Of a stretch of DNA of 64,000 nt, positions 30,499 through 61,192 are shown in pieces. Within the stretch, counting starts at the first letter, position 1, and each line of letters begins with the position of its first letter. A program made the position numbers and the translations under genes. The stretch is taken from positions 1 to 64,000 of the IMG/VR virus record IMGVR_UViG_3300044712_002668. The stretch is one strand, 5' to 3'. A model generated the notes under the pieces. The model had not been told where the DNA came from. It saw nothing but the letters and a program-made list of their open reading frames with translations, and searched no databases.

Positions 30499-30499
30499 T

Positions 30500-46116: not shown

Positions 46117-46779
46117 ATGGCATTAGAATTAGTTCAACCAGGTATTCAATCACTTGGTCAGTTTGATGGTTATGATAACGTTTACTTAACTGTTAAGGGT
46201 GGAGAAGTTGCCACAATCGTACAAGCGGCTGTTAAGGGCGCTGATTTGGCATCTTGGGATGTAAACAATGACGGATATGTTTCTCCAGCTGGAAAGGGTC
46301 AGGCCCGTCCTGCTGCTACAACAAATCTTGTCAGCGGATCCCGTCCATTGTTCCTTGTTGATGACGGTATTGCTGGATATGGAACTCTCTTTGGTTCTGT
46401 TGTTGGTGGGATTGCTGGCCAGTTAACTACTGGACAGGTTCTTGGACCACACAGTGCCACAGGTTCTGGTAAACTCACACTCTGGGACAAACCAGGAACA
46501 TATGCAGTAACACTTGATGCAGTTGACACCACTGCAGGTACTGGCTTGATTCCAAGCAATACCACATTGCAGATTGGTGACAAGCTCTATGCAACCAGCG
46601 CAGGTCTTTTGACCCCAACACTCGGTTCTGCTTTCGAGAACGTTGTTATCGGACGTTTCCTTAATTTCGAGACCAATAAGGGTGGTGCTCTTGTCAACAC
46701 CCCAGTTACCTTGGCTACTACAACCCAGGTACAGCAAATGGCTCGTGCCCTCATTTACTTCGCTCCTCCAATTGCGTAA
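46117..46779 (+). CDS. Capsid decoration/cement protein, paralogue 3
   Basis: Directly upstream of the capsid gene, strong codon bias, LELVQPG and LQIGDKLYATSAGLLTP blocks. Confidence 0.6.
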   Translation: MALELVQPGIQSLGQFDGYDNVYLTVKGGEVATIVQAAVKGADLASWDVNNDGYVSPAGKGQARPAATTNLVSGSRPLFLVDDGIAGYGTLFGSVVGGIAGQLTTGQVLGPHSATGSGKLTLWDKPGTYAVTLDAVDTTAGTGLIPSNTTLQIGDKLYATSAGLLTPTLGSAFENVVIGRFLNFETNKGGALVNTPVTLATTTQVQQMARALIYFAPPIA

Positions 46780-46799
46780 TAATTGAGATATAAAGGTTT

Positions 46800-46822
46800 G
46801 GGGAGTGTTTTTGACACTCCCC
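46800..46822 (+). promoter_or_regulatory. GC-rich stem-loop without U tail between decoration and capsid genes
   Basis: GGGGAGTGT-TTTTG-ACACTCCCC. Confidence 0.5.
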
Positions 46823-46877
46823 GATCCACTAAAGCTGCTGATGGATTTTGGTAGCTTATTTACAGGAGGTTCTTAAT

Positions 46878-47888
46878 ATGAGTTTATTTAGTACACAAGG
46901 CGAAATGAACGCCACTAGTTTGAAGGATGCTTTGCAGACACTTGTAAAGTATGCAGCGATTCTTGAGGAAGGTCAGCCAAGCAATATGCAGCTTGCTGGT
47001 CGTCCAAGTCTCGATGATGGAAAGCGTGATGAGCTTATTGCTCGCGCTATCATGACCCAGGAGGGCAAACTTGCTCTTGCCCAGGCCATGGCGAACCCAA
47101 TTCGCCGCAACTTGGACTACCAAGGTATTGCACGTCGTCTCTTGGTTGTTGACCCTCTTCCACAGGGTGTCAACCCAACCTATGAGCGTGATATTGACGT
47201 AGCCGCTACCGTTATTTCAAGCAACGGTACCGGTGGTGAGAGCCGTGTATTCGGTGATCGTATCACCGTTCCAACATTCGAGCTTTACTCCAACCCAACC
47301 GTTCGTATCTCCGAGGTTCGTCGTCGTAGATTCAACGTCATTGACCGTGCTGTTCAAAAGGCACGTCAGGAGCTTATGGCCCAGGAAGATGCAAACATCT
47401 TCGCAGCCATTGACTCTGCGGCTACAGTAGAGAACGTTGCACAGGATATTGCTGACAGCGGCTTGCTCAAGCGTGACCTTGTTGAAATCAAGGCCCAGAT
47501 TGATCGCTGGGACTTGGTAACAACCAAGTTCTTCATGAACATCAACGAGTTTACTGACATCTTGAACTGGGCATCCGGTGGTGGCCAGGGTCCAGGTGGT
47601 GGTGAAGTTGATCCAGTTACACAGCGTGAAATTCTCCAGACCGGCCTCTATGCCCACATCTGGGGCGCTGACATCATGGTTTCCAAGATTGTTCCACCAG
47701 GAACCGTTTACGGAGCCGCAGACCCAGAGTTCGTTGGTGTTATGCCAATCCGTCAGGACATTGAAGTTCTCCCAGCCGACGAGCCAAAGCAATTGAAGCT
47801 CGGATGGGTTGTTTCTGAGGAGATCGGTATCGGTATCGTCAACCCACGTGGTGTTGCCGTTTCTCGTAAGTCAACTCTCCCAGGATAA
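46878..47888 (+). CDS. Major capsid protein (HK97-like fold)
   Basis: AGGAGG RBS, strongest codon bias in window, LAQAMANPIRRNLDYQGIARRLLVVDPLPQG and VPTFELYSNP..ISEV blocks, strong terminator after it. Confidence 0.85.
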   Translation: MSLFSTQGEMNATSLKDALQTLVKYAAILEEGQPSNMQLAGRPSLDDGKRDELIARAIMTQEGKLALAQAMANPIRRNLDYQGIARRLLVVDPLPQGVNPTYERDIDVAATVISSNGTGGESRVFGDRITVPTFELYSNPTVRISEVRRRRFNVIDRAVQKARQELMAQEDANIFAAIDSAATVENVAQDIADSGLLKRDLVEIKAQIDRWDLVTTKFFMNINEFTDILNWASGGGQGPGGGEVDPVTQREILQTGLYAHIWGADIMVSKIVPPGTVYGAADPEFVGVMPIRQDIEVLPADEPKQLKLGWVVSEEIGIGIVNPRGVAVSRKSTLPG

Positions 47889-47911
47889 TTAGTCCAGTAG
47901 AGTCGTAACAG

Positions 47912-47943
47912 GAGGCGGGATTTAGGTCCCGCCTCTTTTTTTT
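47912..47943 (+). terminator. Intrinsic terminator after capsid gene
   Basis: GAGGCGGGAT-TTAG-GTCCCGCCTC followed by T8. Confidence 0.9.
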
Positions 47944-47995
47944 GCTAAACCCCTGACGCTCTTCTTTTCGGAAGGGCATTTTTTTGTATAGAAAC

Positions 47996-48778
47996 ATGTT
48001 ACCATTAGAAGCAAAAATAAGGCTAATAGCGCGTGTGGTGGATGATTTCACAGAGTTTGCTGCATCAAATAATACACCGCCATCTAATTTTACATATAAA
48101 ATCAATAGCGCCGATGAAGGTTCTGATATTCATCGTCAAGCTCGTTTGGCTGCTTATGCCTCTTTTGAAAAACCTTTAATAAAAAATGCTTTTGATACCA
48201 GGCGTATAAATCAAGAAACAGATCGTAACCCAAGAACCAATCTTCAATATTGGCACCGTACCGATCCTTTCATTGATGATACTGATAAATCAAAGTTGAA
48301 TACTTTTGCTAAACTATTCAATATGCTTGATAATACCAAAAAGAAACTTGGTACTCAACCAGAATGGTTTGAAAGCTATACTCGCCAATTACATGATAAT
48401 GTACACAGAATTTTACGAGTCAAACAAGCGGATCTTGATATATTCAGACCTCAATTATCATACTTGGAACAGTTGATATATGCACGTTATAGATTATCAA
48501 TGGAAGATATTGAAAAGCTATCTGAAGATGAGCTTAGAGATAAAATCCTTGCCAAAGATGAGGGTTTGATAGGAAGAAATAATTATCTTAAAGAGACTAC
48601 AGGTACAGATGAAAACAATTCAAATTCTTTAAAAATAACCAAAGATGGATTGACCAAAACAACTCAGGAATCTATAATAAATGCAATCTTTGGTGCTGAT
48701 GGCAGTTTTAGGAAAGATGGTGAAAAAAATGTTGAGCGTACTATAACCATCACTATAAGAGATAACGTAATTGACTAA
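47996..48778 (+). CDS. Hypothetical protein
   Basis: ~260-aa ORF after capsid terminator; start 47984 or 47996. Confidence 0.7.
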   Translation: MLPLEAKIRLIARVVDDFTEFAASNNTPPSNFTYKINSADEGSDIHRQARLAAYASFEKPLIKNAFDTRRINQETDRNPRTNLQYWHRTDPFIDDTDKSKLNTFAKLFNMLDNTKKKLGTQPEWFESYTRQLHDNVHRILRVKQADLDIFRPQLSYLEQLIYARYRLSMEDIEKLSEDELRDKILAKDEGLIGRNNYLKETTGTDENNSNSLKITKDGLTKTTQESIINAIFGADGSFRKDGEKNVERTITITIRDNVID

Positions 48779-48786
48779 GGAAAATA

Positions 48787-49401
48787 ATGCCTCCTGTTGG
48801 GTTTGAAACATGGTATCCAAAACATTGTCATACTGTTTTTACAGTACGTAATATATGTACTGATAACAGATTGATACATGTATTCCATTATCCTATACCA
48901 CCAGGTAAACAAAGGGATTTGATGGAGATTCCTTATGTATCAGAAGCAGATATCAGACACTCTTTATTGAAGGGTGAACTATATATCAAACTTATTTGTA
49001 GGGATATAAGAGTTGTTGATAGCACTATAGATCTTATACAGTTCGATGCTTGTCATAAGAACTTCTTGCAAGAAGCCGGTATTACAATTGGATTGGATGC
49101 AGGTGGTGGCGGTGGTGGACAAGTTGATTATTTATTCCGTCAAAATGTACAGTTAATTGGTCCTAAGAATGATGCTAATAGAGTTTTTATGACTCCATTC
49201 GGGGAAAAGTTTATAAATGATACGTTTGAAGATAATGATTTTCGTATAATAGTAGAGCATAATGGAAGAAGGTTAATAGAAGATATTGATTATACTGTAT
49301 TAGAATCCATGCCAGGTTTGGGATATGATATGGTACGATTTGATTCTTTTGTACCTAATAAACGTAGTCAGATTATAGCGGATTATGTAATAAAAAGGTG
49401 A
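48787..49401 (+). CDS. Putative virion structural protein
   Basis: 204 aa; C-terminal beta domain VEHNGRRL..DYTV. Confidence 0.6.
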   Translation: MPPVGFETWYPKHCHTVFTVRNICTDNRLIHVFHYPIPPGKQRDLMEIPYVSEADIRHSLLKGELYIKLICRDIRVVDSTIDLIQFDACHKNFLQEAGITIGLDAGGGGGGQVDYLFRQNVQLIGPKNDANRVFMTPFGEKFINDTFEDNDFRIIVEHNGRRLIEDIDYTVLESMPGLGYDMVRFDSFVPNKRSQIIADYVIKR

Positions 49402-49404
49402 TAA

Positions 49405-50892
49405 ATGGCTTCCAGATATAATGCATTAGACCAAGAGTTAGATATTGCGGGTTCACAAACACAATTGGCAACAATGACCTTGGCTGATGAGCCTAGTTTA
49501 CTTGGAAGCCCAGTGGTTGGTCAAACAGGAGCTGTAGGAACTATTACAGCAGCCTCTGGTGGTGTTACAACTCTTGGTGGTTTGACAGGTATGACTGTCA
49601 ATTCTGTTGGTAGGTTTATCACTATAACAGGTGCGGCAAATGCTAATAATAATGGAACTTTTCTTATTATTACATACAACTCAGCTACATCTGTAGATAT
49701 TGCAAATGCAACAGGTGTATTTCCTGATGCAAATAGCGGAACTCTTGGATGGACAGAAAGAGCTCCATATTCATTGCTTGATGATTTGAATTATGAGAGA
49801 ACAGATCGTCAAGCTATCAAGGGTGTTCCATATTATGATCCAATTCCAACATATACCCGCCCTACAGCGACAACAACACCGGTTCCAGCCAATTTATCAA
49901 ATATTGCTGGTAAAACTACCGATGCACAGGCGGTTGTAACAAATAGAAAATATGAAGATGCCAGTGTTAATCTTGGTGATGGTTATGTAATTTTGACAGC
50001 TACAGGTCAATTACAACATGCTGGTACAATTGATAGAACCGGAGTACCAATATGGAGCGGTGCTGATAATGGAAATTGGGAAGCAACTTATTGTGAACTT
50101 GCTTCTGAACTTGAAAGAGAGCTTGTAGTAGTAGGTGGTCCATATGATGGCTATCGTATTTTTGGACGTGCAACGGGAGGATATTCTACATCTCCTGATA
50201 CCGTAGAGGTAGATTTCTTCTGTGTGCAGCGTGGTGCTCCAATAGGTACAGCAGTTCCATATGTTTGGGATGGATATCAACCAACACAGATTGATATTTA
50301 TTATCCATATAGAGTTCGTTTGGATCAAATGCCAGAAACAGCGATGCGTGTTTTGTTGGTAAATGGTTTAGTTAGCGATTCTTTTACACAAGAAATTGAC
50401 CAGATTCTTTCTACTATTGGAACAACTCCTGGTGATACCAGTTTGGCTGGCCTTCTCACCAATCTTACTGCTTATTATCCGTTCTATAATCTTCCAAATG
50501 CAACACCAACAGTTGTTGATGCGTTGAATACTTTGAATGAACAAATTGGAAACCGTGATTATACTGGTCCAATTCTTACAGATGGTTACACAATAACACA
50601 ATCTTTACAACAGTTGGCAAATGCTATTTCAGGTGCAACTTCTCAAAGATATATTGAAAGATTGGGATCTGCAGTAGCAGCAAATACTGCTCATACTCTT
50701 CCAGGTGGTTTGTCATACACTCCAGATGGAACAAATAATGGAAAGAATATGTGGGTATTTACTAGAGGATTGTTGAGAGATCCAGGCCCTGCAAGTGGTG
50801 GTAATGATTATGCTGAAACCAGTTCTACACAAATCACTTTCTATTCAAGATTGAATACAGGGGATCATATAAATTATATCGTATATCTTTGA
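49405..50892 (+). CDS. Putative virion surface/fibre protein
   Basis: 495 aa, Thr/Gly rich; C-terminal VFTRGLL..NDYAE..ITF domain related to that of 48787. Confidence 0.6.
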   Translation: MASRYNALDQELDIAGSQTQLATMTLADEPSLLGSPVVGQTGAVGTITAASGGVTTLGGLTGMTVNSVGRFITITGAANANNNGTFLIITYNSATSVDIANATGVFPDANSGTLGWTERAPYSLLDDLNYERTDRQAIKGVPYYDPIPTYTRPTATTTPVPANLSNIAGKTTDAQAVVTNRKYEDASVNLGDGYVILTATGQLQHAGTIDRTGVPIWSGADNGNWEATYCELASELERELVVVGGPYDGYRIFGRATGGYSTSPDTVEVDFFCVQRGAPIGTAVPYVWDGYQPTQIDIYYPYRVRLDQMPETAMRVLLVNGLVSDSFTQEIDQILSTIGTTPGDTSLAGLLTNLTAYYPFYNLPNATPTVVDALNTLNEQIGNRDYTGPILTDGYTITQSLQQLANAISGATSQRYIERLGSAVAANTAHTLPGGLSYTPDGTNNGKNMWVFTRGLLRDPGPASGGNDYAETSSTQITFYSRLNTGDHINYIVYL

Positions 50893-50905
50893 TATATAGT
50901 GATTT

Positions 50906-51461: not shown

Positions 51462-51507
51462 GATTAAACCTGTATTAAGGTATAACCGGTTCTAAAGGCT
51501 ATACCTG

Positions 51508-52626
51508 ATGTCTCAGCTTAATTTAATCCGAAAAGAAGATATTCTGGATTCAGATTTCTTTGATGCTTATGAACTATCTTCCGATGGTTATGAGGTATAT
51601 TTTTCGGGAGCAACCGTTTTATCCACCTCTTCAATAAGTAAAACTGTTGTTGTTTCCGGAATTACACAAACAAATCGTGATAATAACGTAGAAGTAGGCG
51701 ATAGGGTATATCTGTATGGTACTTCTGGTGCTGATGGGTATTACACTATCGCTTCTATTTTAAATGATTATTCTTTTACTACCTTAGAGAATATAGTAAG
51801 TTCTACTGGTGGTAAATGTGATTATATTTATCATTCTGGTGCTTTGAATATTGGTTTTGATCCTACAAGAACCAATAATATTACAGCTCATAATGTTCAA
51901 GATGCCATTGATCAGTTAGATCAAGTAGTTACCAATTGTTGTGCAGGTAAGGGTAATCTTGATGGGTATAAACATGCTGAATTAAGGCAGTTAATTCATT
52001 TGGCAGACGGTATTGGCGGGCCTTTTGAAGGTTTCATTACCGGGGCTTATAGAGAGCTTACAGGTTCCATGATATTTCCAACAACTGTTACCTGGTATGT
52101 TGATTCCGGGAAAACGAAAAAAATTGTTGAAAAGTTTATAACATACGATGCTTTTTTGGCTGTATCTCAAATAACCTGGAATGTATATTTCAATGACGGT
52201 ATAAATGTTGCAGCTACTGCTACAGATATTATTACAAACTCTGGTCCATTTGAAATATCCAGAATAAGAAATATCACAGATTACAGTGTAACCAGCGGAG
52301 CGTTAACAGAAGAAACTCATAAGAGTCTAAGACAGCTTATACATCTGTCAGATGGTGTCGGTGGTCCTTTTGAGACATTTCCAAATGGTGTTTATAGAGA
52401 AATTAATCCAGTGGGTCCATTTCCAACTTCTATTATATGGTATATGGATGCTACCAAGACAAGTAAAATCGTTGAGAAGTTCATTACTTATAATGGTTAT
52501 AAAATGCCTACTCAAGTTTTACGAAACGTTTATGATACAAACGGGGTTACAATTTTGGCAACGGTTATTGATACCATGACATACAGTGGTGCTTTTGAAA
52601 TAAATAGAACAAGAGCAATCATGTAA
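51508..52626 (+). CDS. Putative virion protein with duplicated C-terminal domain
   Basis: Two copies of H..LRQLIHL.DG.GGPFE.F..G.YRE...FPT...WY.D..KT.KIVEKFITY. Confidence 0.7.
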   Translation: MSQLNLIRKEDILDSDFFDAYELSSDGYEVYFSGATVLSTSSISKTVVVSGITQTNRDNNVEVGDRVYLYGTSGADGYYTIASILNDYSFTTLENIVSSTGGKCDYIYHSGALNIGFDPTRTNNITAHNVQDAIDQLDQVVTNCCAGKGNLDGYKHAELRQLIHLADGIGGPFEGFITGAYRELTGSMIFPTTVTWYVDSGKTKKIVEKFITYDAFLAVSQITWNVYFNDGINVAATATDIITNSGPFEISRIRNITDYSVTSGALTEETHKSLRQLIHLSDGVGGPFETFPNGVYREINPVGPFPTSIIWYMDATKTSKIVEKFITYNGYKMPTQVLRNVYDTNGVTILATVIDTMTYSGAFEINRTRAIM

Positions 52627-52666: not shown

Positions 52667-53914
52667 ATGTCAGCAGAATCACCAGCATCAATTTTGTTTT
52701 CATCGGATGGTATTGAATTAGCCGTTCAAAATGGAGTATCAACTCCGGCTAATACTCGTGGTATCATAGCAACAGGACAAAGCGCAGACGGTTACTCAAG
52801 ATTTATTAAATTAGATACTTTGGGTAATGTTATTGTAGCTGGTTCTGGTACAGCAGGATCTCCAGCCGGTGGAGTTTTGACGATTCAAGGTTCTCCAACA
52901 GGAACTCCTATTCCAATTAGCGGTAGTATTACAGCTACATCAAGTGGTAATGCTACTCCCTCAGATGGTTATGCCAACCCAAGCAATGCATCCCTTGAAT
53001 TTAGTTTATTGGCTGGTTTTAACGGTACAACTTGGGATAGGTTGAGAACCGGAACTACTAATGCTGATGCTGTAGCTAACTTGACTCTGGGTGCATTACA
53101 GACAGGTAGTTATTTATATGGTTATAATGGTGCAACATGGGATAGATTACGTTCATCCACTGCTAATGGTTTGGTGGTTGATGTTACTCGTATTCAAACT
53201 GCTGTTACTGCAAACCAGGGAACTTCAAACACTTTAGCTAATGCTTGGGCAACCAAGATTACAGATACTACAAATGGCCCTGTAGCTGTCAAAGCCGCTT
53301 CTACTGCAGCTATAGCCACTGATCCTGCTTTGGTAGTTGCTATTTCTCCAAATAACTCTGTAACAACCGTTGGTGGTACAACCCCAGCTGATGCTTTTGC
53401 AAACCCAACCACTGCTCAAACAGATTTCAGTTTACAAGCTGGTTTTAACGGTACTACCTGGGACAGGCTCAGAACACAGGGAAGCAATGCTGACGCTATC
53501 TCTGTATTGACACTTGGTGTACAGACCACGGCTGGATATTTATATGGTTTCAACGGAACTACATGGGATAGATTACGTTCATCTACAACCAATGGTCTTG
53601 TTGTTGATGTAAGCCGTGTACAAGGTGTTGTATCCCCTCCGGTTTCAGCCACATCAACTTTATCAAACGTTGCTGCTTCTGCTTCAAACGTTACATTATT
53701 AGCCGCCAACTCTGCTCGTTTAGGAGCTACAATATATAATGACTCAAACAATGTTTTGTATGTCAAGTTGGGAACAACAGCTTCTACTACTAGCTTTACA
53801 ATTAGATTGTTAAGTCAGTCTTATTGGGAGGTTCCATTCAATTACACAGGAAGAATTGATGGAATTTGGAACGGATCTAACGGATCGGCTAGAATGGATG
53901 AATTGACTGCATAA
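52667..53914 (+). CDS. Repeat-rich fibre/spike protein (short form)
   Basis: Four (F/Y)NG(T/A)TWDR units; N- and C-terminal domains shared with 53961. Confidence 0.7.
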   Translation: MSAESPASILFSSDGIELAVQNGVSTPANTRGIIATGQSADGYSRFIKLDTLGNVIVAGSGTAGSPAGGVLTIQGSPTGTPIPISGSITATSSGNATPSDGYANPSNASLEFSLLAGFNGTTWDRLRTGTTNADAVANLTLGALQTGSYLYGYNGATWDRLRSSTANGLVVDVTRIQTAVTANQGTSNTLANAWATKITDTTNGPVAVKAASTAAIATDPALVVAISPNNSVTTVGGTTPADAFANPTTAQTDFSLQAGFNGTTWDRLRTQGSNADAISVLTLGVQTTAGYLYGFNGTTWDRLRSSTTNGLVVDVSRVQGVVSPPVSATSTLSNVAASASNVTLLAANSARLGATIYNDSNNVLYVKLGTTASTTSFTIRLLSQSYWEVPFNYTGRIDGIWNGSNGSARMDELTA

Positions 53915-56900
53915 TTTGGCTTGATATATAGTAAGTTGAGAGTCAGAATATAGGATTTTCATGAGTGGAACATCACCAGCTGTAACTTTATTTAATTCAG
54001 AAGGAACCGAGTTAGCCGTTAAAAGTGGAGATACGATATCTTTAAATTCTCCAGCGTTAATTTTAGCTGGAAAAACCACTGATGGATATGCTTATCCTGT
54101 TTCTGTGGATGGGTATGGACGGCAAGTTATTGTTAGCGATCCTTCTAGTCCATTAGCTATTAGTGGAAACATTACTGCAACAAACCCTTCGGTTGGTACT
54201 AACGATGCAACCGCTCCAACCAGCTCTACACAAATTGCTGGCGTAAATATTGATGGTTATTTAACTGCTGTACAAGTAAGTCGTGAAGGCCACGTAGCAA
54301 TAGCTGGAAATACTTTACAAGGGTATGCTGGTGAGGTTGTTGGTTGGACTACTACTACACACCAATCATTGACAGTTGATGGTATTGGAGCTTTATATAC
54401 TCGTGGTCAGGTGATGACCGATGAAGGATCTTTTACTGATGATTTCCAGGGTTCAGGATTTACTACTAACTTAACTGGTACATTGGAGTTTACCAATGGT
54501 TCAGATCAGGTTGTTGGTACTGGAACTCTATTTTTGACAGAGTTGGATTATTATACTGTCATTAAAAAAAGCACTGATGCTGATACATTGTTTATACAGG
54601 TTTCATCTGTTGAGGATGATACACATTTAACTTTACTTACTCCATATCAAGGAACATCTCAGTCTGGACAGACTGGTGTTAAATCAAAATGGATTACAGC
54701 AGTTGGTACTGGCGGATCAATTTCTGTTGGTAGTTCACTTGTAACAATTGCTGCTGGTACAACCAGCGGTTCTATCACTGGATTCTGGACTGTTCCCGAT
54801 TACATCCCGTTCTTGGGAGCGTTAAAGGTTTCTGTAGATAATAGGCGTTCAAATCAGAATATCTACATTGGATGGTTTGACGTAGCTCAGAATGCTCAAC
54901 CAAACCTTTTGGCAGCATTTTTATTGGATGGAACAACCAATACAGCGGCAAAATGTGTATCTGGTACGTCTACTGCTGCTGCAGATACTCAAACAACAAG
55001 CATTACAATACCAAACGGCGCTAACAGTACAGCATCAAACATATATCGTGTAGCTCCTTGGCAAGGCCAGGTTGCATTTTATATCAATGATTCTCTAGTT
55101 GCAGTAAATACACAACATATTGTTCCACCATATGCTGATATAAGGTTTGGTGTATATGTTGTAAATACCGGAATTCCTGCAGGCGCTACCAGCATTGTTA
55201 CTGATTCGGCAATTTACGAAAGCATTGACAGATTTGATGTTCGTTGCTATAATACGAACGCTGATTTGTTACAGGTTACAGCTAATGGTCGTACCACCAC
55301 AGGTGTTCCTGTTCCCCTTCAGGTTAGCTCTGCTGGTATTGCAGTAGTATCTGGTGCTGTGACGCTATCTGGTACCGCAAATACTATACGTGGCAACGTT
55401 ACACAATATACTGCTGATGGTACGGCTGCTGCTGCTAACTCACTACCAGTGATTGCGCAGATGCTCGCAAAGAAGGAAGGTGCCAATACTCTTGACCGTT
55501 TAGTAGCTGGTCCAACCAATGCTGATGGTGAGGCTGTAGAAACTGTAGGCGCTCTTGTAACCAAATCCAGACTTTATGGGTTCAATGGTACAACGTGGGA
55601 TCGTTTAGACAGTTCTACTGCTAATGGTCTTATAGTTGATGTTAGTCGTGTTCAGGGAACTGTAACAGTTGGCGGTATCAACGCCAATGGTGGTGGTATA
55701 ACCGGAAACCCGGTTCGTATTGGAGGCTCATCTGGAGCTGCTACTTATGATATCAAGTGTGATACCAGCGGTAACCTTTATATGCAAGGCATGGGTACTG
55801 CTGGAGCTGCCTCTGGTGGAGTGCTTACCATTCAGGGCGATCCCAGTGGTACTCCAATACCTATCAGCGGATCAATTACTGCTACAAATCCGTCAGTTTC
55901 TATTGTAAACACAACACCTCCTGGTTCAGCCACTTATATTGGTGCCAAAGCCAATACAAACGCTCCAACAATGACTGATGGGTATATAGCTCCGTTGTCA
56001 TTGACAACTGGTGGAAGGTTGAGAGTTGAATCTCAATTCTTGAACGTTGTTGATTCTGGAAACTCTACTACAACTCCTCTTGGTGCGGGTGCTACATTTA
56101 CTGGAACAGCGGTAGATTTATTATCATATGCTAGCATTACATATTCTGTATTTACAGACCAGGATAGTGCTGCAAATGGAGTTGTATGTCAGTTCAGTCC
56201 TGATAATGTAAACTGGGATGACCGTATAACTAATAGTAAAACTGCAGACGGAACAGTTAGCGATTTTTCGGCTCGTCCACATGATAGGTATTTCAGAATC
56301 AAGTATACCAACGGAGCTACACCTCAAACTACATTCCGTTTTTATACTATCTTGAAGCGTATCATGCCGGCTGGTGATACTACAGGAGTTGATCATCCAC
56401 CACATTCTGGTGATGATGCTCTTCTGGTAAAAGCTGTCATGTCTGGTAAATCCACTGGTGGTGGCGGTTCATATGTTGACGTGAAAGTGAATCCATCTGG
56501 GACAATCCAGATTGGAGGTGGAGATACGCCTGCCGAAGGTCATGCAAACCCAACAGACGCGCAGCTTTCAACGGCGTTTAATATGGGCTGGAACGGTACG
56601 ACATGGGACCGTATTCAAACTCACGGAAATGATGTTGATGCTGATACCGTTGAAAGCACAGGATCACTAGCTGTTTGCTCACACAATATGGTTTTCAATG
56701 GTACAACATGGGATCGTATACGTGGAACTATTGCAAACGGACAGCTCGTTGATGTCTCTAGGGTGCAGGGAAATGTCACGGTTACTCAAGCAACAGCTTC
56801 TAATTTGAATGCTGCTGTTGTTGGTACTGGTGTGGCTGGTACACCTGCGGGTGGAGTTCTTACTGTCCAAGGATCTCCAACTGGAACTCCAATACCAATT

Positions 56901-58390
56901 TCCGGCAGCATTACAGCAACAAACCCGAGCGTTGGAAGCATCGGTGCTTCAGTACCAACAAGCGGCACTTTTATAGCTGGCACAGACGGATCTTTGCTTA
57001 GGGGTATTCAGTCTGTACAAGTACAAACAGCTCCAAATGGCAGCGATTATGCATTAGTTACAAAGAATGCTTATCAATCAACTATAGGAGCCTCAGTACC
57101 GAGTTATGCTGCTTTCATGTCTGGTACTGACGGGTCACTTGCTCGTGCAGTATATTTGGCCACTGCTGGAACGGCCGTTTCTGGTTCAGAGTATGCAGTG
57201 CTTGTAAGAAATGGTTTTCAAGCACAAACAGGACAGAGCCCGCCGTCTTATGCAGCATTAATAGGTGGTAGTGATGGCTCTCTAACAAGGGTGTTAAGAA
57301 CCGCAGCTGATGGAACATTAAGAGTTGATCCAACTGGCACAACCACACAACCTGTTTCTGGAACAGTTACAGCTGCACAAGCTACCGCTGCCAACCTGAA
57401 TGCAACTGTGGTTCAAGGCAATGCGGGAACAGCAGCTCAAGGTTGGTTTGCAAGAATTACTGATGGAACCAATACTGCTGCTGTGAAAGGCGCATCAACT
57501 GCTGCAATAGCTACAGATCCTGCTTTGGTAGTTGCAATATCTCCTAATAATTCGTTAACAATTTCTGGTAATATCACTCCAGCAGATGCATTTGCTAATC
57601 CAACAACAGCACAAACCGGCTGGAGTTTGCAGGCAGTGTTCAATGGTACTACTTGGGATAGAGCAAGAGGAACAGCGGCTCTTGGAACCTATGTTTCTGG
57701 CCCGGTAGCATCTGGAAATACAGTGCCTGCAAACCCTGTGTTTGTTGGTGGTTCTGATGGTACAAACGTCAGAGCTATAAGAACTGATACTTCTGGTTAT
57801 GCAGCGGTAAGAGTTACGGATCAAACTAACTTTATGCCAACGATGGACGCGGCAGCGCGTCGTGGTTATGTACAAATAACAGATGGCACCAATAGCATGC
57901 CAACTGCTGATACAGTAGCAAGAAGCAGTTTCCATAGAATTACTGATGGAACCAATACCGCTGCTGTAAAAGCAGCTTCAACAGCGGCAATTGCAACAGA
58001 CCCAGCTTTGGTAGTTGCAATATCACCGAATAATCCTCTCACAATTGGTGGTAGTTCAACACCATCAGATGGATACGCCAACCCAAGCACAGCGTCACAA
58101 TCCCAAGCTTTCAATATGGTATATAATGGCACCACTTGGGATAGACAGCGTGGTACTACCGCATTGGGTACTTATGTATCAGGGCCTGTAGCCTCTGGTA
58201 ATGCGGTTCCAGCAAACCCAATATTTATTGGTGGTTCTGATGGTACAAATATCAGAGCTGTAAAGACTGATGGGTATGGAGATGTATTTACAAGACTTAG
58301 TGACGGTGTCAGCAACGTTGCTATAAAAGCGGCGTCAACAGCAGCGGTTGCCACAGATCCGGCGTTGGTAGTTGCAATATCTCCGAATAA
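53135..58390 (+). repeat. Dispersed DNA direct repeats within and between the two fibre genes
   Basis: Identical 23-mer at 53135 and 53561; identical 20-mer at 53321 and 57516; identical 23-mer at 57453 and 57936. Confidence 0.85.
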
Positions 58391-58688
58391 TTCTCTAACT
58401 GTAAAAGAACCAAGACCTGGGACTGCATCACAAGCTAACGTAGCATTGAGCGCTACTAGCGTTACATTGTTGTCATCAAATTCAAATAGACTAAGATATT
58501 CAGTGATAAACGATACAAATAGACAGGCTTACGTATCGCATAGCGGGGCCGCAAGTACAACAAACTTTAAATATACACTTCAACCTGGTGAATATTATGA
58601 GGATCCCTTCCCATGTTTCACTGGAGCCGTAACCATTATATGGTCAGCTTCTGGAAGCGGATCGGCTAGAGTTTGTGAGGAGACATAA
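53961..58688 (+). CDS. Repeat-rich fibre/spike protein (long form)
   Basis: 1575 aa; five NGTTWDR units, three AVK.ASTAA.ATDPALVVAISPNN units, GGVLT.QG.P.GTPIPISGSITATNPSV units. Confidence 0.75.
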   Translation: MSGTSPAVTLFNSEGTELAVKSGDTISLNSPALILAGKTTDGYAYPVSVDGYGRQVIVSDPSSPLAISGNITATNPSVGTNDATAPTSSTQIAGVNIDGYLTAVQVSREGHVAIAGNTLQGYAGEVVGWTTTTHQSLTVDGIGALYTRGQVMTDEGSFTDDFQGSGFTTNLTGTLEFTNGSDQVVGTGTLFLTELDYYTVIKKSTDADTLFIQVSSVEDDTHLTLLTPYQGTSQSGQTGVKSKWITAVGTGGSISVGSSLVTIAAGTTSGSITGFWTVPDYIPFLGALKVSVDNRRSNQNIYIGWFDVAQNAQPNLLAAFLLDGTTNTAAKCVSGTSTAAADTQTTSITIPNGANSTASNIYRVAPWQGQVAFYINDSLVAVNTQHIVPPYADIRFGVYVVNTGIPAGATSIVTDSAIYESIDRFDVRCYNTNADLLQVTANGRTTTGVPVPLQVSSAGIAVVSGAVTLSGTANTIRGNVTQYTADGTAAAANSLPVIAQMLAKKEGANTLDRLVAGPTNADGEAVETVGALVTKSRLYGFNGTTWDRLDSSTANGLIVDVSRVQGTVTVGGINANGGGITGNPVRIGGSSGAATYDIKCDTSGNLYMQGMGTAGAASGGVLTIQGDPSGTPIPISGSITATNPSVSIVNTTPPGSATYIGAKANTNAPTMTDGYIAPLSLTTGGRLRVESQFLNVVDSGNSTTTPLGAGATFTGTAVDLLSYASITYSVFTDQDSAANGVVCQFSPDNVNWDDRITNSKTADGTVSDFSARPHDRYFRIKYTNGATPQTTFRFYTILKRIMPAGDTTGVDHPPHSGDDALLVKAVMSGKSTGGGGSYVDVKVNPSGTIQIGGGDTPAEGHANPTDAQLSTAFNMGWNGTTWDRIQTHGNDVDADTVESTGSLAVCSHNMVFNGTTWDRIRGTIANGQLVDVSRVQGNVTVTQATASNLNAAVVGTGVAGTPAGGVLTVQGSPTGTPIPISGSITATNPSVGSIGASVPTSGTFIAGTDGSLLRGIQSVQVQTAPNGSDYALVTKNAYQSTIGASVPSYAAFMSGTDGSLARAVYLATAGTAVSGSEYAVLVRNGFQAQTGQSPPSYAALIGGSDGSLTRVLRTAADGTLRVDPTGTTTQPVSGTVTAAQATAANLNATVVQGNAGTAAQGWFARITDGTNTAAVKGASTAAIATDPALVVAISPNNSLTISGNITPADAFANPTTAQTGWSLQAVFNGTTWDRARGTAALGTYVSGPVASGNTVPANPVFVGGSDGTNVRAIRTDTSGYAAVRVTDQTNFMPTMDAAARRGYVQITDGTNSMPTADTVARSSFHRITDGTNTAAVKAASTAAIATDPALVVAISPNNPLTIGGSSTPSDGYANPSTASQSQAFNMVYNGTTWDRQRGTTALGTYVSGPVASGNAVPANPIFIGGSDGTNIRAVKTDGYGDVFTRLSDGVSNVAIKAASTAAVATDPALVVAISPNNSLTVKEPRPGTASQANVALSATSVTLLSSNSNRLRYSVINDTNRQAYVSHSGAASTTNFKYTLQPGEYYEDPFPCFTGAVTIIWSASGSGSARVCEET

Positions 58689-60574
58689 TGCCTATTTATT
58701 CGCAACCTACAGCAAAGAGTGTAGCAACAATTAGTAAAGAGCCTAGTGGATGGGCTGATAGAACAACAGCTACTCTTAGCAGAGTTGATGGTACGCTTAC
58801 ATTCAGCGTCACACCTGTTAGCGGATCTTTTACAATTTATATCAAAGGCGTACCTTTCACTTATACCTCTGCACAATCTATAACCTGGACAGATACAGAG
58901 GGTACTTGGTATTTTTATTTTGATATCAACGGCACTCTTACATCAACACAAGATTCGAATGCGTGGGTTACGGCTTTACTTGGCGATGGTGTATTGGTAG
59001 CATCATTATATTGGGATGCTACAAACAATATAAGCATGATGTTCTCAGAAGAGCGTCATGGTTTTATGCAAGGTGATATTCATCTTGAGATGCATAATGC
59101 ATTTGGTACGCAATGGGTATCTGGTGGTGTACTTTCTCCTACTACTGTTGCTGGTACTGGTGCAAATGCTTCTGATGCTCAACTTGGTGTCAGTACAGTT
59201 ACCATCTACGATGAAGATATCAGGATGACATGGTCTAATGGATCTCCGCAGACCATGAATAACCCTGCTGCTATACCTGTATATTACAAATTAGGCGCTA
59301 ATGGTTATTGGAGAAAGAAAACCGCTGATAGCTGGCCATTTATTTATTCTGGAACAGCAGGATATACAGGAGCGCAGGGACGTATTCCGTATAATCAAAA
59401 TAATGCTGGAACTTGGTCATTGACACAAATAGCGCAAAGCAGCTATGTTTTGATACATATTTACGCTACAAATGATATTATTGAACCTATTATAGCTATA
59501 CATGGTCAAACAGAATATGCAACATTAAATTCAGCTCAGTCTGGAATTACAACTGAATTATTGAGTATTTCTGCCATTGTAAAAGGATTGAATTTTGAAG
59601 TAACTCCACTTGGATCTTTGATAGTGCAATCAAACAGTGGTTATGGAAACACTCCAAAAGCCAGATTTCAACCTGCTACAGCAGCAGGCGCTTCATATAT
59701 AGATTTTCGTGGCAATACTTTTAGAGGTGGTACCAGCTCTGGTGTTACTGCTCACAGCCAGCTAACTGGTCTTGCTAATGATGATCATACAATATATGCG
59801 TTATTGGCTGGTAGGGCTGGTGGTCAAACTTTAATTGGTGGTACTGCTGCTAGTGAAAACTTAACACTTCAATCAACTGCAAACGCTACTCGCGGATATA
59901 TAACCATACCAGATCCATTAACAATAGGATCAAATCCAGATTTCTCTATAATACCAATTTCAAGTAGTCAAGTTGCAATTACATCTCGTAGAGATTTACA
60001 ATTAGTTGGAAATAGACAGGCTGGAGTTAGCTATACACCATCAGTTATAGGTGGAGATGGTTACTATTCAGTTATTATACCATCATCTTCTAACTCCACA
60101 TTAGCTACGGTAGGAATAAGAGCCACTGTAGGTCAAACAATTCCAATGTTAAGATTTGAAGATGGTTATGGAACCAGTGTTGGAACAATAGATTCTAGCG
60201 GAAATATAGCGTTAGTAAACAAGAATGTTAGCGGTGTAAAAACAGCAACATTTAATACACACCAAGCTATTACAGCTTCAACATCAGCAACAACTATAGA
60301 TTTTTCATCATATCAATCGGCAACTGTAACTTTGGTTGGAAGCCAGGCAACAGCATTTACTTTAACATCACCTGCTGGTCCAACAGCATGCAGATTGATT
60401 GTAATACAACCAGCATCAAATATGGTAACACCAACATGGACTACAAAACCATATGCTCCAAGCGGAGCTTTAACAATAGCCACAACAGCCAGTGCAAGAA
60501 CGCTGATTGGTTTGGTATATGATGGAAGCGTTTGGTATGCAGTATCATCTCAACCTATGACACAGTTAGCGTAA
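58688..60574 (+). CDS. Putative fibre/receptor-binding protein
   Basis: 628 aa, Ser/Thr/Gly rich, HSQLTGLANDDH fibre-type motif, C-terminal beta domain. Confidence 0.6.
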   Translation: MPIYSQPTAKSVATISKEPSGWADRTTATLSRVDGTLTFSVTPVSGSFTIYIKGVPFTYTSAQSITWTDTEGTWYFYFDINGTLTSTQDSNAWVTALLGDGVLVASLYWDATNNISMMFSEERHGFMQGDIHLEMHNAFGTQWVSGGVLSPTTVAGTGANASDAQLGVSTVTIYDEDIRMTWSNGSPQTMNNPAAIPVYYKLGANGYWRKKTADSWPFIYSGTAGYTGAQGRIPYNQNNAGTWSLTQIAQSSYVLIHIYATNDIIEPIIAIHGQTEYATLNSAQSGITTELLSISAIVKGLNFEVTPLGSLIVQSNSGYGNTPKARFQPATAAGASYIDFRGNTFRGGTSSGVTAHSQLTGLANDDHTIYALLAGRAGGQTLIGGTAASENLTLQSTANATRGYITIPDPLTIGSNPDFSIIPISSSQVAITSRRDLQLVGNRQAGVSYTPSVIGGDGYYSVIIPSSSNSTLATVGIRATVGQTIPMLRFEDGYGTSVGTIDSSGNIALVNKNVSGVKTATFNTHQAITASTSATTIDFSSYQSATVTLVGSQATAFTLTSPAGPTACRLIVIQPASNMVTPTWTTKPYAPSGALTIATTASARTLIGLVYDGSVWYAVSSQPMTQLA

Positions 60575-60583
60575 AGAGGAATT

Positions 60584-61192
60584 ATGACAACAACTACAAC
60601 TACATTACTTTATCCTTTTAGTGATTTTCCAAATAAAAGCTGTAATCCAGATATTTTAATAAGAGAATTACAAGATGCTTCGGTTTCTGGTGCGGCTGTT
60701 ACTCTTATTGGAAACAATGCACAAATCTCTTTCAACCAATTATTGACAAGCTCTCAAATAGTTTTATGTGATGGGGTTGTATCGGTTCATCAAGGATCTG
60801 TTTTCCAACCACAAATGCAGGGTTGGTTTATACAAGAAGATGGATATACAACAAATTCAGAATGGGTAAATTGTTTTACATTTGATACTGGTGCTCTGCC
60901 TGAATCTTGGTATCAGATTATGTGGTCATGTGAAACTTCTGCAGATGGTGGTGGAATTGCAGAATTCAGGTCACTTATCAATGGTGTAAACTATGTCACT
61001 CCAATGATTGAAGTAAGTTATGATAGCTGGGATAGAAGTACATGGGGCAGTTTAAGTGGTGGTATGTGGGTATACAGGCGTGCTGGTGAAAATGTAGTTA
61101 TTAATTTTGAACACAAAACAAATACAGGAATAGCAAACATTAGAAGAAGAAGATTTTCATTAATCAACGTTGGTAGAAACGTAAATTCATAA
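60584..61192 (+). CDS. Virion-associated protein, tandem paralogue A
   Basis: TLLYPFSDFPNKSCNPDILIRELQDASV aligns by eye with 61200. Confidence 0.6.
   Translation: MTTTTTTLLYPFSDFPNKSCNPDILIRELQDASVSGAAVTLIGNNAQISFNQLLTSSQIVLCDGVVSVHQGSVFQPQMQGWFIQEDGYTTNSEWVNCFTFDTGALPESWYQIMWSCETSADGGGIAEFRSLINGVNYVTPMIEVSYDSWDRSTWGSLSGGMWVYRRAGENVVINFEHKTNTGIANIRRRRFSLINVGRNVNS

What the first reader, a model, noticed from the sequence alone, without database searches (positions are those of the whole stretch)
46117..61192. DGY tripeptide strongly enriched in surface and fibre proteins
Seen: I count 20 DGY in seven proteins totalling 3907 aa (46117 x2, 49405 x4, 51508 x3, 52667 x2, 53961 x6, 58688 x2, 60584 x1). 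I noticed only one in the rest of the window (RuvC). Flanks mostly differ (FDGYD, WDGYQ, ADGYY, VDGYG, EDGYT), so it is not simply repeat expansion. Rough residue frequencies predict about one by chance. Inference: a sequon for post-translational modification (Tyr glycosylation, acylation or phosphorylation; note the CapK-like ligase next door and the CX5R phosphatase), an Asp-Gly isoaspartate site, or a docking motif for a common virion partner.
Basis: partly seen in the sequence, partly recalled or inferred. Interest (0 to 1): 0.7.

Follow-up and report, generated by a model that had tools for sequence, protein, structure and literature searches.

The report
Virion-only DGY tripeptide, candidate glycosylation sequon
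In this uncultured giant phage and its relatives, Asp-Gly-Tyr occurs about twelve times more often than chance, only in exposed loops of outer virion proteins, beside a large phage-encoded sugar-transferase island, so it may be a new tag for sugar-coating the particle.

Summary
The window has 20 DGY in seven proteins (0.95 expected) and one elsewhere.

The window is the first 64 kb of a 336-kb phage contig related to Bacillus phage G. Across that contig:
- DGY is by far the most over-represented tripeptide (93-94 observed, about 17 expected).
- The excess lies in the virion module (80 vs 6.4). The rest of the genome is at expectation (11 vs 9.6).
- The signal is in-frame only, follows normal synonymous codon usage, and is specific to D-G-Y (DGF, DGW, NGY, EGY are not enriched).
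- There is no extended flanking consensus, and about 82 of 93 contexts are non-redundant.

In 117 orthologues of one neck-like protein, DGY sits at 23 different alignment columns (22 positions of the window protein). These are mostly predicted loops, and the motif is gained and lost many times. Relatives share the enrichment (319 vs 39.5). Phage G essentially does not.

Inside the virion module, outside the window, lies an all-soluble glycosylation island: about 9 glycosyltransferases, GDP-mannose dehydratase, nucleotidyltransferases and a methyltransferase. Its GT4 gene was found in all ten clade genomes tested and not in phage G.

Best reading (about 0.4): DGY is a sequon for cytoplasmic glycosylation of virion surface loops, probably on Tyr. 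This is unproven; mass spectrometry is needed.

The parts
46117..46779 (+). Capsid-decoration-like protein (220 aa), with DGY at aa 17 and aa 52 (nt 46165-46173 and 46270-46278)
   Evidence: It lies directly upstream of the MCP, as phage G gp26 'capsid decoration' does. It hits phrog_49 'head decoration' at E = 4.5e-4. The best Foldseek hits are weak but are capsid decoration or cement proteins. DGY52 is present in 58 of 58 aligned orthologues (the 59th row is gapped there), while DGY17 is present in only 16 of 59. In the AlphaFold2 model DGY52 sits in a low-confidence loop.
46848..47888 (+). Major capsid protein, 0 DGY (context and clade marker)
   Evidence: It hits phrog_2522 at E = 8.5e-78. 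It is 54% identical to phage G gp27 and 80-91% identical to 80 IMG/VR loci.
49405..50892 (+). Neck-like virion protein (495 aa), with DGY at aa 192, 248, 289 and 393
   Evidence: The AlphaFold2 model has pLDDT 86, and all four DGY start in coil just before a strand or helix. There are local fold matches to neck proteins 8es4_F and 9oab_Ga. In 117 orthologues DGY occupies 23 alignment columns, with 0-6 per sequence and none invariant.
51508..52626 (+). Unannotated virion-module protein (372 aa), with DGY at aa 26, 76 and 152
   Evidence: Counts are. In orthologues the sites are present in 11/14, 8/14 and 1/14 sequences. There is no Pfam or PHROG family hit.
52667..53914 (+). Fibre- or spike-like protein with FNGTTWDR repeats (415 aa), with DGY at aa 41 and 100
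   Evidence: It belongs to a viral family of hypothetical proteins in the ESM Atlas.
53961..58688 (+). Giant fibre-like protein (1575 aa) with FNGTTWDR repeats, with DGY at aa 41, 50, 98, 673, 1370 and 1437
   Evidence: Site 1370 is a repeat copy of site 100 in ORF 52667.
58688..60574 (+). Unannotated virion-module protein (628 aa), with DGY at aa 457 and 492
60584..61192 (+). Unannotated protein (202 aa), with DGY at aa 86
4557..5120 (+). RuvC-like protein carrying the only DGY outside the structural block (internal control)
   Evidence: The Pfam RuvC hit is weak, at E = 1.5e-4.
30482..31591 (+). Tyrosine-phosphatase-family protein (HCKHGKDRT); considered as a DGY-related enzyme, but no link was found
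   Evidence: It hits Y_phosphatase2 at E = 7.6e-10, and the motif was found. It is conserved in G001 and G004 but not in phage G.

Best explanation
DGY is a free-standing three-residue motif that selection keeps, in large and shifting numbers, in exposed loops of the outer virion proteins of this phage clade. These proteins include the capsid decoration protein, a neck protein, the extra domain of the tail sheath, baseplate periphery proteins and the fibres.

The most likely reason is that DGY is a sequon read by phage-encoded, soluble glycosyltransferases. These would attach a sugar, most plausibly to the Tyr hydroxyl, and build a glycan on assembled or assembling virion proteins in the cytoplasm, giving the particle a glycan coat.

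Shown:
- the enrichment and its specificity to D-G-Y;
- its restriction to virion proteins;
- its loop location and its turnover between orthologues;
- the presence, position and conservation of the glycosylation genes.

Inferred:
- that those enzymes act on virion proteins;
- that DGY is what they recognise;
- that Tyr is the acceptor.
For: 1. Strength and specificity. In the virion module DGY is 80 vs 6.4 expected (p = 5e-58). The near neighbours are not enriched: DGF 10 vs 6.0, DGW 2 vs 1.6, NGY 12 vs 7.8, EGY 0 vs 3.6, YGD 7 vs 6.4. In virion proteins 34% of all DG are followed by Y and 46% of all GY are preceded by D. Elsewhere the figures are 4% and 6%.

2. Protein-level signal. The pattern is in-frame only, with normal synonymous codon usage.

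3. Virion restriction with a sharp boundary. In G000 the GT island has 2 vs 1.1 and the rest of the genome 11 vs 9.6. In 10 relatives, the 10 kb on the virion side of the GT4 gene hold 151 DGY vs 8.2 expected, and the GT side holds 4 vs 4.4.

4. No shared context. 237 non-redundant flanks give no extended consensus. In two AlphaFold2 models, five of six DGY lie in coil next to different secondary-structure elements. The sixth (aa 17-19 of 46117) ends a strand.

5. Sequon-like turnover.
- In 117 orthologues of 49405, DGY occupies 23 alignment columns, the most of any tripeptide, with 0-6 per sequence.
- About 116 parsimony changes are needed on the tree.
- The alternative states at those columns are unrelated (EAG, SPN, AAS, AGE).
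- At 17 of the 22 positions of the window protein the D and G lie in coil, against a 43% background (p = 0.001).
- Between G000 and G001 orthologues, 18 of 32 sites are shared while G001 has 31 others. With G004, 10 of 30 are shared.

6. Clade-wide and independent of GC content. DGY is the top tripeptide in G001 (91 vs 16.0, GC 43%) and in G004 (40 vs 13.4, GC 35%). In 80 MCP-centred loci it is 319 vs 39.5.

7. Writer candidates. An island at about 116-137 kb sits inside the virion module and is almost entirely on the virion genes' strand. It contains:
- a GT4;
- four GT2;
- a 668-aa GT-B-like protein;
- a GT11;
- a Glyco_trans_1_2 protein;
- an FkbM methyltransferase;
- a HAD hydrolase;
- two nucleotidyltransferases, one fused to a kinase-like domain;
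- GDP-mannose 4,6-dehydratase.
Another GT2 lies between fibre genes at 168 kb. No island protein has a predicted transmembrane segment, so glycan assembly must take place in the cytoplasm.

8. GT4 conservation. The GT4 was found in all ten clade genomes tested (41-71% identity where measured). No hit appeared in the first 400 kb of phage G, and Pfam GT1 is sub-threshold across the whole phage G record. Phage G also lacks the phenomenon: 32 vs 20.8, mostly one repeated domain motif.

9. Dose trend. GT2 gene number tracks DGY excess: rho = 0.60 (p = 0.018) over 15 genomes and rho = 0.78 (p = 0.024) over 8 near-complete ones.
Against: - No modification has been observed, and there are no proteomic data.
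- No precedent was found for a DGY sequon or for viral Tyr glycosylation.
- The GT island could serve another target: DNA hypermodification, host envelope or a small molecule.
- The GT-versus-DGY correlation rests on perhaps 3-4 independent lineages and on partly fragmentary contigs.
- G004 has no GT2, yet DGY is still its top tripeptide, so most island genes are not required for the enrichment.
- One fragment (G012) has GT2 genes but no DGY excess, although its virion module is probably truncated.
- Non-virion proteins show no depletion of DGY, which off-target glycosylation might have been expected to cause.
- The major capsid protein itself has no DGY.
- A purely non-enzymatic role of an exposed Asp/Tyr pair would fit points 1-6 of the supporting evidence equally well.
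Confidence: 0.4

Rival explanations
1. DGY is a non-enzymatic surface-function motif. An exposed Asp carboxylate next to a Tyr ring would act as a minimal sugar-binding or adhesive patch. Multiplied over hundreds of subunits, it would give weak multivalent sticking to polysaccharide such as host capsule, biofilm matrix or particles. No modification would be involved.
For: This fits the same observations as the sequon reading:
- virion restriction, loop location, position independence and turnover with a maintained load;
- specificity for Tyr over Phe or Trp and for Asp over Glu or Asn;
- persistence of the enrichment in G004, which lacks the GT2 genes.

Several DGY-rich proteins carry lectin-like or dockerin domains.
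Against: A three-residue patch without a defined pocket is an unusually strict requirement for weak binding. The reversed YGD, or DGF and DGW, would be expected to work partly, yet they are not enriched. This reading also does not explain the conserved juxtaposition with the GT4 gene and the island, or the trend with GT number.
Confidence: 0.2
2. DGY is a structural or stability device. A tight Asp-Gly turn capped by a Tyr would stabilise loops of long-lived extracellular proteins, for example against proteases. It would have been acquired convergently.
For: D-G is a good turn former. Five of six modelled sites lie in coil at the edge of a strand or helix, often with high pLDDT. One site (DGY52 of the decoration-like protein) is present in 58 of 58 aligned orthologues.
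Against: - NGY, DGF, DGV and DGI, which should serve as well, are not comparably enriched.
- At polymorphic columns the alternatives are chemically unrelated.
- Homologous virion proteins of phage G and of low-DGY relatives do without the motif.
- Asp-Gly is the sequence most prone to isoaspartate formation (established chemistry). That is a liability for a long-lived particle.
- There is no common secondary-structure context or flank consensus.
Confidence: 0.12
3. DGY marks another covalent chemistry: Tyr phosphorylation, nucleotidylation or sulfation; deliberate Asp-Gly isoaspartate or succinimide formation; or Tyr/Asp cross-linking between subunits.
For: A Tyr-phosphatase-family gene sits in the head-gene block and is clade-conserved. 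The specificity for the Tyr hydroxyl and the Asp carboxylate suits chemistry at either residue.
Against: - No protein kinase, sulfotransferase or isoaspartyl methyltransferase was identified. These families were not searched exhaustively.
- A phosphatase removes rather than writes a mark.
- The only kinase-like domain is fused to a nucleotidyltransferase in the sugar island.
- Gene support is far weaker than for glycosylation.
Confidence: 0.1
4. DGY is a docking motif for one common partner, such as an assembly chaperone, a cement protein or a host factor, that recognises many virion proteins.
For: The motif is short, linear, exposed and shared by otherwise unrelated virion proteins. A conserved 167-aa protein of unknown function lies between the DGY-richest baseplate-side gene and the GT4 gene.
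Against: Proteins carry 0-11 copies at shifting positions. Orthologues with 0 DGY exist (10 of 117). That is hard to reconcile with a required docking step. No candidate reader was identified.
Confidence: 0.08
5. The enrichment is an artefact of composition, repeats, ORF calling or a DNA-level signal.
For: Some sites are repeat copies, for example the 117-aa repeats in ORF 162321 and TPSDGYANPS in the window. Phage G's small excess is indeed a repeated domain motif.
Against: - Per-protein shuffles never exceed 6, against 20 observed.
- 82 of 93 contexts are non-redundant.
- The signal is in-frame only and uses mixed synonymous codons.
- It is reproduced in relatives with GC of 35-43%.
Confidence: 0.01

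Closest known systems
Mycobacteriophage virion glycosylation (Freeman et al. 2023, as summarised in PMC12619734)
   Same: The phage encodes its own glycosyltransferases next to structural genes. The proposed targets are virion surface proteins, and the presumed outcome is a glycan coat on the particle.
   Different: In mycobacteriophages the glycans sit at the C-termini of capsid and tail-tube subunits. Here the candidate sites are an internal DGY tripeptide in loops of many peripheral proteins. The MCP itself has none, the island is much larger (about 9 GTs plus nucleotide-sugar enzymes), and nothing has been shown biochemically.
Chlorovirus and giant-virus autonomous glycosylation (PBCV-1 Vp54, Mimivirus fibrils; from my own knowledge)
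   Same: The virus encodes GDP-mannose 4,6-dehydratase, soluble glycosyltransferases and a sugar methyltransferase. Glycosylation is cytoplasmic, needs no membrane oligosaccharyltransferase, and uses non-canonical acceptor sequences.
   Different: Those viruses use N-linkage to Asn in their own atypical sequons and infect eukaryotes. Here the motif has no Asn, Ser or Thr, and the virus is a tailed phage.
Tyrosine O-glycosylation of Gram-positive S-layer proteins (Paenibacillus alvei SpaA, Thermoanaerobacter; PMC2943079)
   Same: This is the only established bacterial system with glycans O-linked to Tyr of a surface protein array.
   Different: The S-layer pathway builds the glycan on a lipid carrier and transfers it outside the membrane with an O-oligosaccharyltransferase. 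The phage island has no membrane proteins. The held review (PMC2943079) does not mention a consensus or sequon; the primary paper was not held.
Bacteroidota general O-glycosylation sequon D-(S/T)-(A/I/L/V/M/T) (my own knowledge; general system described in PMC8698959)
   Same: It is a three-residue sequon that starts with Asp, is scattered over many surface-exposed proteins, and is position-independent.
   Different: The acceptor is Ser or Thr and the system is periplasmic and lipid-linked. It is host-encoded rather than viral.
Repeat motifs of phage fibres, such as the YPxNGRHTDGYWYVRG domain repeated in phage G giant proteins
   Same: They contain DGY and occur in large tail or fibre-like proteins.
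   Different: Those are copies of one homologous domain with a long conserved context. In the window's phage the contexts are unrelated and the motif turns over.

Membership tests
Phage-encoded virion glycosylation (mycobacteriophage type) | Phage-encoded glycosyltransferases located with the structural genes | tested here: met
   GT4, GT2 x4-5, GT11, Glyco_trans_1_2 and a GT-B-like protein lie at 116-127 kb, between virion genes and almost entirely on their strand. Another GT2 lies at 168 kb.
Phage-encoded virion glycosylation (mycobacteriophage type) | Glycans demonstrated on capsid or tail subunits by MS or staining | not testable with these tools
   The phage is uncultured and known from metagenomes only. 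No proteomic data are available.
Phage-encoded virion glycosylation (mycobacteriophage type) | Acceptor sites at the C-termini of capsid and tail-tube subunits | tested here: not met
   DGY sites are internal and scattered, and the MCP has no DGY.
Giant-virus autonomous cytoplasmic glycosylation | Virus-encoded nucleotide-sugar synthesis | tested here: met
   GDP-mannose 4,6-dehydratase (E = 1.7e-122), an NTP_transferase, a kinase/NTP-transferase fusion and a HAD hydrolase are present.
Giant-virus autonomous cytoplasmic glycosylation | Soluble enzymes, with no lipid-carrier, flippase or OTase step | tested here: met
   There are 0 predicted TM segments in all island ORFs by a crude hydropathy scan. 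Genome-wide only one ORF was flagged with at least 4 segments: the 682-aa virion-module ORF at 99127, which I regard as a probable false positive of the crude scan.
Giant-virus autonomous cytoplasmic glycosylation | N-linkage to Asn in atypical sequons | tested here: not met
   The motif contains no Asn. N-x-S/T is not enriched in virion proteins (378 vs 345).
S-layer-type Tyr O-glycosylation | Membrane O-oligosaccharyltransferase and lipid-linked glycan | tested here: not met
   No membrane proteins are present in the island. Wzy_C was not searched for specifically.
S-layer-type Tyr O-glycosylation | Glycan O-linked to Tyr | not testable with these tools
   This is inferred only from the strict requirement for Tyr rather than Phe or Trp.
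Homologous structural repeat or one repeated fold | Extended conserved context around the motif and a common secondary-structure position | tested here: not met
   No flank position is enriched more than about 2-fold for any common residue in 237 non-redundant contexts. The motif occurs in different folds and loop types. 82 of 93 contexts are non-redundant.
Short linear motif or sequon (generic) | Enriched over composition, located in exposed or coil regions, position-independent, with evolutionary gain and loss | tested here: met
   

The most novel reading that the evidence does not exclude
DGY is the first defined sequon for cytoplasmic protein tyrosine O-glycosylation. It would be written by a conserved phage GT4, extended by a variable set of GT2, GT11 and methyltransferase enzymes, on dozens of surface loops per virion protein. 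A whole clade of environmental giant phages would then wear a self-made glycan shield whose site map evolves like that of enveloped animal viruses.
Probability: 0.3. Interest if true: 0.85.

Novelty: new variant of a known kind. Interest (0 to 1): 0.75.

Why it matters
If DGY is a glycosylation sequon, it would be:
- a new protein-glycosylation code (three residues, a Tyr acceptor, soluble enzymes);
- evidence that virion glycan coats occur well beyond mycobacteriophages, in large uncultured phages;
- a compact tag-and-enzyme pair that could be tested for glyco-engineering in bacteria.

Even if no modification exists, the signal is unusual. A tripeptide kept at about 12-fold excess in outer virion proteins, with rapid site turnover, points to a strong and so far undescribed selective pressure on phage particle surfaces.

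The signal is also a cheap sequence marker for telling exposed virion proteins from internal ones in this clade.

Tried and rejected
Family and homology searches
- Pfam and PHROG scans of most window structural ORFs gave nothing useful.
- The 'CapK-like ligase' was not found.
- tblastn of 49405 against cultured phages gave no hit. For 52667 only three metagenomic records matched.
- Foldseek of both models against the PDB gave no significant global match.
- phmmer of the GT4 and of the 668-aa protein against the PDB was uninformative.

Literature
- 'DGY motif', DGY plus phage, and 'glycosylated tyrosine' plus phage gave nothing relevant.
- The key papers on Tyr O-glycosylation and on mycobacteriophage glycosylation were not held.

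Explanations rejected
- A DNA-level signal.
- A composition or dipeptide artefact.
- Repeat expansion.
- A generic beta-turn plus aromatic residue.
- Enrichment of the N-x-S/T sequon.

Inconclusive or unavailable tests
- DGY count in 49405 orthologues against DGY density in neighbouring genes correlated only weakly (rho = 0.44, p = 0.067, n = 18).
- DNA hypermodification as the island's purpose: no ThyA or dCMP-hydroxymethylase homologue was found in G000, but the contig is only 78% complete, so this is not excluded.
- Searching 'relatives' is not available for virus records.
- No complex prediction was run, because an enzyme-peptide encounter is outside what that test validates.


Full report
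**What the window is**

All long ORFs run on the + strand. The window is the first 64 kb of a single 335,988-bp virus contig, G000, which CheckV rates 78% complete.

- The ORF at 46848-47888 is a major capsid protein. It hits phrog_2522 at E = 8.5e-78 and is 54% identical to Bacillus phage G gp27.
- The same MCP is 80-91% identical to 80 IMG/VR loci. These sit on contigs of up to 452 kb.

So this is an uncultured clade of giant phages whose only cultured relative is the distant phage G.

Other identifiable genes in the window:
- a terminase at 23077;
- a portal-like gene at 24954, 33% identical to phage G gp14;
- a RuvC-like gene at 4557;
- a Tyr-phosphatase-family gene at 30482.

Most structural ORFs have no Pfam or PHROG family.

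**Check of the observation**

The counts are exact: 20 DGY in the seven named ORFs (3907 aa) and one in the remaining 16,770 aa.

- With per-protein composition the expectation for 46117-61192 is 0.95.
- In 20,000 per-protein shuffles the mean was 0.97 and the maximum 6.
- DGY ranks first of all tripeptides in the region (p = 6e-20).
- Only one pair of sites is a repeat copy, so 19 of 20 contexts are independent.

**Extension to the whole genome**

With a simple ORF caller (434-445 ORFs, about 102-105 thousand aa), DGY occurs 93-94 times against about 17 expected. It is the top tripeptide by more than 25 orders of magnitude in p.

The nucleotide pattern GAYGGNTAY is enriched only in frame 0 of the sense strand (94, against 2-7 in other frames or antisense). 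Its codons follow the genome's synonymous usage. Selection therefore acts on the peptide, not on the DNA.

The excess is confined to the structural module:

| Part of G000 | DGY observed | DGY expected |
|---|---|---|
| Virion module (46-116 kb and 139-170 kb) | 80 | 6.4 |
| Enzyme island between them | 2 | 1.1 |
| Rest of the genome | 11 | 9.6 |

In virion proteins 34% of all Asp-Gly are followed by Tyr and 46% of all Gly-Tyr are preceded by Asp. Elsewhere the figures are 4% and 6%, which is what composition predicts.

The requirement is strict. In virion proteins the near neighbours are not enriched:

| Tripeptide | Observed | Expected |
|---|---|---|
| DGF | 10 | 6.0 |
| DGW | 2 | 1.6 |
| NGY | 12 | 7.8 |
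| EGY | 0 | 3.6 |
| YGD | 7 | 6.4 |

**Which proteins carry it**

DGY-rich proteins are:
- the decoration-like protein upstream of the MCP;
- a neck-like protein at 49405, whose C-terminus matches neck proteins 8es4_F and 9oab_Ga;
- the tail sheath;
- proteins with ConA-like lectin, dockerin and T7-fibre-N domains;
- several 1,500-2,200-aa fibre-like proteins.

In the sheath, the DGY lie at aa 198-222. This is outside the conserved C-terminal sheath domain at aa 630-843.

Within the module the distribution is bimodal:
- Proteins with a phage G homologue (MCP, sheath and others of unknown function) have 5 DGY in about 5,900 aa.
- Several large proteins, such as the 1740-aa ORF at 91874, have none. 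They may be internal, but their roles were not established.
- Clade-specific proteins, which are probably peripheral, carry the other 75.

**Not a repeated fold**

- 237 non-redundant contexts from this genome and its relatives show no extended consensus. No common residue is enriched more than about 2-fold at any flank position.
- 82 of 93 G000 contexts are non-redundant.
- The AlphaFold2 model of 49405 (117-sequence alignment, pLDDT 86) puts D and G of all four DGY in coil. Three sit just before strands (Y194 opens one) and one just before a helix.
- In the model of 46117 (pLDDT 76), the conserved DGY52 lies in a low-confidence loop and DGY17 at a strand end.

**Evolutionary behaviour**

In 117 orthologues of 49405 (54-67% identical):
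- DGY occupies 23 different alignment columns, the most of any tripeptide.
- There are 0-6 DGY per sequence, and no column is fixed.
- The alternative residues at those columns are chemically unrelated (EAG, SPN, AAS, AGE and others).
- On a FastTree built without those columns, about 116 state changes are needed. Recombination and tree error may inflate this number.
- These columns map to 22 positions of the window protein. At 17 of them D and G lie in coil, against a 43% background (p = 0.001). All high-frequency columns are in coil.

In the decoration-like protein, one site (aa 52) is present in 58 of 58 aligned orthologues and the other in 16 of 59.

Between G000 and G001 orthologues, 18 of 32 G000 sites are shared, while G001 has 31 further sites. 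Against G004, 10 of 30 are shared.

This pattern, a load that is maintained while sites move, is what N-glycan sequons do on viral envelope proteins (my own knowledge).

**Distribution among relatives**

| Genome or set | DGY observed | DGY expected | Note |
|---|---|---|---|
| 80 loci, ±10 kb around the MCP | 319 | 39.5 | |
| G001 (392 kb, GC 43%) | 91 | 16.0 | top tripeptide |
| G004 (349 kb, GC 35%) | 40 | 13.4 | top tripeptide |
| Phage G, whole genome | 32 | 20.8 | p = 0.013 |

Most of phage G's excess is a repeated domain motif, YPxNGRHTDGYWYVRG, in four giant proteins. That is an ordinary repeat. The trait therefore belongs to the environmental clade, not to phage G.

**The surroundings: a glycosylation island**

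The island lies between the DGY-richest baseplate-side gene (113222-116191, 8 DGY) and further virion genes. All its assigned genes are on the virion genes' strand, and many have overlapping stop and start codons. Its genes:

| Position in G000 | Gene |
|---|---|
| 116991 | GT4 |
| 118280, 118963, 120688, 124417 | GT2 |
| 121491 | 668-aa protein with a GT-B-like C-terminal half (ESM Atlas lead only) |
| 125199 | GT11 |
| 125918 | Glyco_trans_1_2 protein |
| 128330 | FkbM-type methyltransferase |
| 128929 | HAD hydrolase |
| 131057 | kinase/nucleotidyltransferase fusion |
| 133611 | nucleotidyltransferase |
| 135783 | GDP-mannose 4,6-dehydratase (E = 1.7e-122) |

A further GT2 lies at 168203, between fibre genes.

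None of the island proteins has a predicted membrane segment (a crude hydropathy scan). So there is no flippase, polymerase or oligosaccharyltransferase, and any glycan must be built on a soluble acceptor in the cytoplasm.

The GT4 gene is a core gene of the clade:
- It is 70% identical in G001 and 41% in G004, with a matching Pfam GT1 hit in G003. G002, G005, G006, G007 and G009 score 45-68%.
- The GT4-centred loci add 66-71% matches, including G008.
- In total it was found in ten of ten clade genomes tested.
- In several genomes a GT2 lies directly beside it.
- Phage G gave no BLAST hit in its first 400 kb. Across its whole record Pfam GT hits are only sub-threshold.

In 10 GT4-centred loci, the 10 kb on the virion side carry 151 DGY (8.2 expected). 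The GT side carries 4 (4.4 expected).

GT2 gene number tracks the excess of the DGY pattern over its reversed-pattern control:
- rho = 0.60 (p = 0.018) over 15 genomes;
- rho = 0.78 (p = 0.024) over 8 near-complete genomes.

This is suggestive only, because the genomes fall into perhaps three or four lineages and several are fragments.

**Interpretation**

What is shown: strong, specific, protein-level selection for Asp-Gly-Tyr in predicted loops of outer virion proteins, with turnover. Also shown: a conserved, soluble, virus-encoded glycosylation apparatus embedded among those genes.

What I infer (confidence about 0.4): DGY is the acceptor sequon of that apparatus, most plausibly with the Tyr hydroxyl as the acceptor, because Phe and Trp do not substitute.

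Precedents for the general idea:
- mycobacteriophage virion glycosylation (cited in PMC12619734);
- giant-virus autonomous glycosylation (my own knowledge);
- Tyr-linked S-layer glycans (PMC2943079).

None of these uses such a motif, and literature searches found no DGY sequon.

The main rival (about 0.2) is a non-enzymatic adhesive or sugar-binding role of exposed Asp/Tyr pairs. It explains everything except the gene neighbourhood. Structural stabilisation (about 0.12), another covalent chemistry (about 0.1) and a common docking partner (about 0.08) follow. Chance, composition, repeats and DNA-level signals are excluded.

**Caveats**

- ORFs were called with a naive longest-ORF procedure.
- Virion roles of five of the seven window proteins rest on position, size and composition rather than on homology.
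- Exposure was judged from secondary structure and pLDDT, not from coordinates.
- The island could instead modify DNA. No ThyA or hydroxymethylase homologue was found in G000, but the contig is incomplete.
- G004 keeps a 3-fold DGY excess without any GT2, so at most the GT4 (plus one other GT1-family gene) can be essential.
- Non-virion proteins show no DGY avoidance.

Noticed in passing
window 52667-53914 and 53961-58688: There is a second strongly enriched motif: nine copies of a near-invariant FNGTTWDR(L)R in repeated modules of about 35 and 140 aa. WDR is 10 observed vs 0.13 expected in the region. The repeat is often preceded by DG[Y/F/H]ANP[S/T]. Pfam gives only weak hits (Peptidase_U40, DUF6385). 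The protein belongs to a large viral family of hypothetical proteins in the ESM Atlas.
   Followed up: partly
window 30482-31591: This is a tyrosine-phosphatase-family protein (HCKHGKDRT; Y_phosphatase2, E = 7.6e-10). It sits among head genes, between the portal-like gene and the MCP. It is conserved in G001 (44%) and G004 (39%), with no hit in the first 400 kb of phage G. It might be a packaged effector, but its function is unknown.
   Followed up: partly
window 10899-17189: This 2096-aa ORF has no DGY and no BLAST orthologue in G001, G004 or the first 400 kb of phage G. Its neighbours on both sides are conserved.
   Followed up: no
G000 contig 116,275-136,784 and 168,203-169,000 (loci L003, L004, L151): This is a large all-soluble glycosylation island inside the virion module. 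It has about 9 glycosyltransferase-like genes, an FkbM methyltransferase, a HAD hydrolase, two nucleotidyltransferases and GDP-mannose 4,6-dehydratase. An extra GT2 lies between fibre genes.
   Followed up: yes
G000 contig 235717-235926, 281866-282114, 316169-316405, 316406-316645: Four small ORFs (69-82 aa) are rich in Gly, Tyr and Cys (for example GGDGYGYGDGYCGYRW). They lie outside the virion module, and it is uncertain whether they are real genes.
   Followed up: no
Phage G JN638751 316,783-343,435 (loci L141-L143): Four giant proteins share a repeated YPxNGRHTDGYWYVRG motif and an LVDGYxVKxGGN motif. These repeats account for most of phage G's small DGY excess.
   Followed up: partly
G000 as a whole: The product of 49405-50892 is on record on a 454,833-bp contig, whereas G000 is 335,988 bp, is labelled a provirus and is rated 78% complete. 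The contig held here is probably a trimmed or partial version of a genome of about 450 kb.
   Followed up: no
G000 contig 84384-86921 (L002:384-2921): The tail sheath carries its three DGY within 25 residues (aa 198, 205, 222). These lie in an N-terminal or insertion region outside the conserved sheath domain (aa 630-843). The local sequence is a tandem pattern, RRDGYGNPIDGYAKFVV...LDGYGNQ.
   Followed up: no
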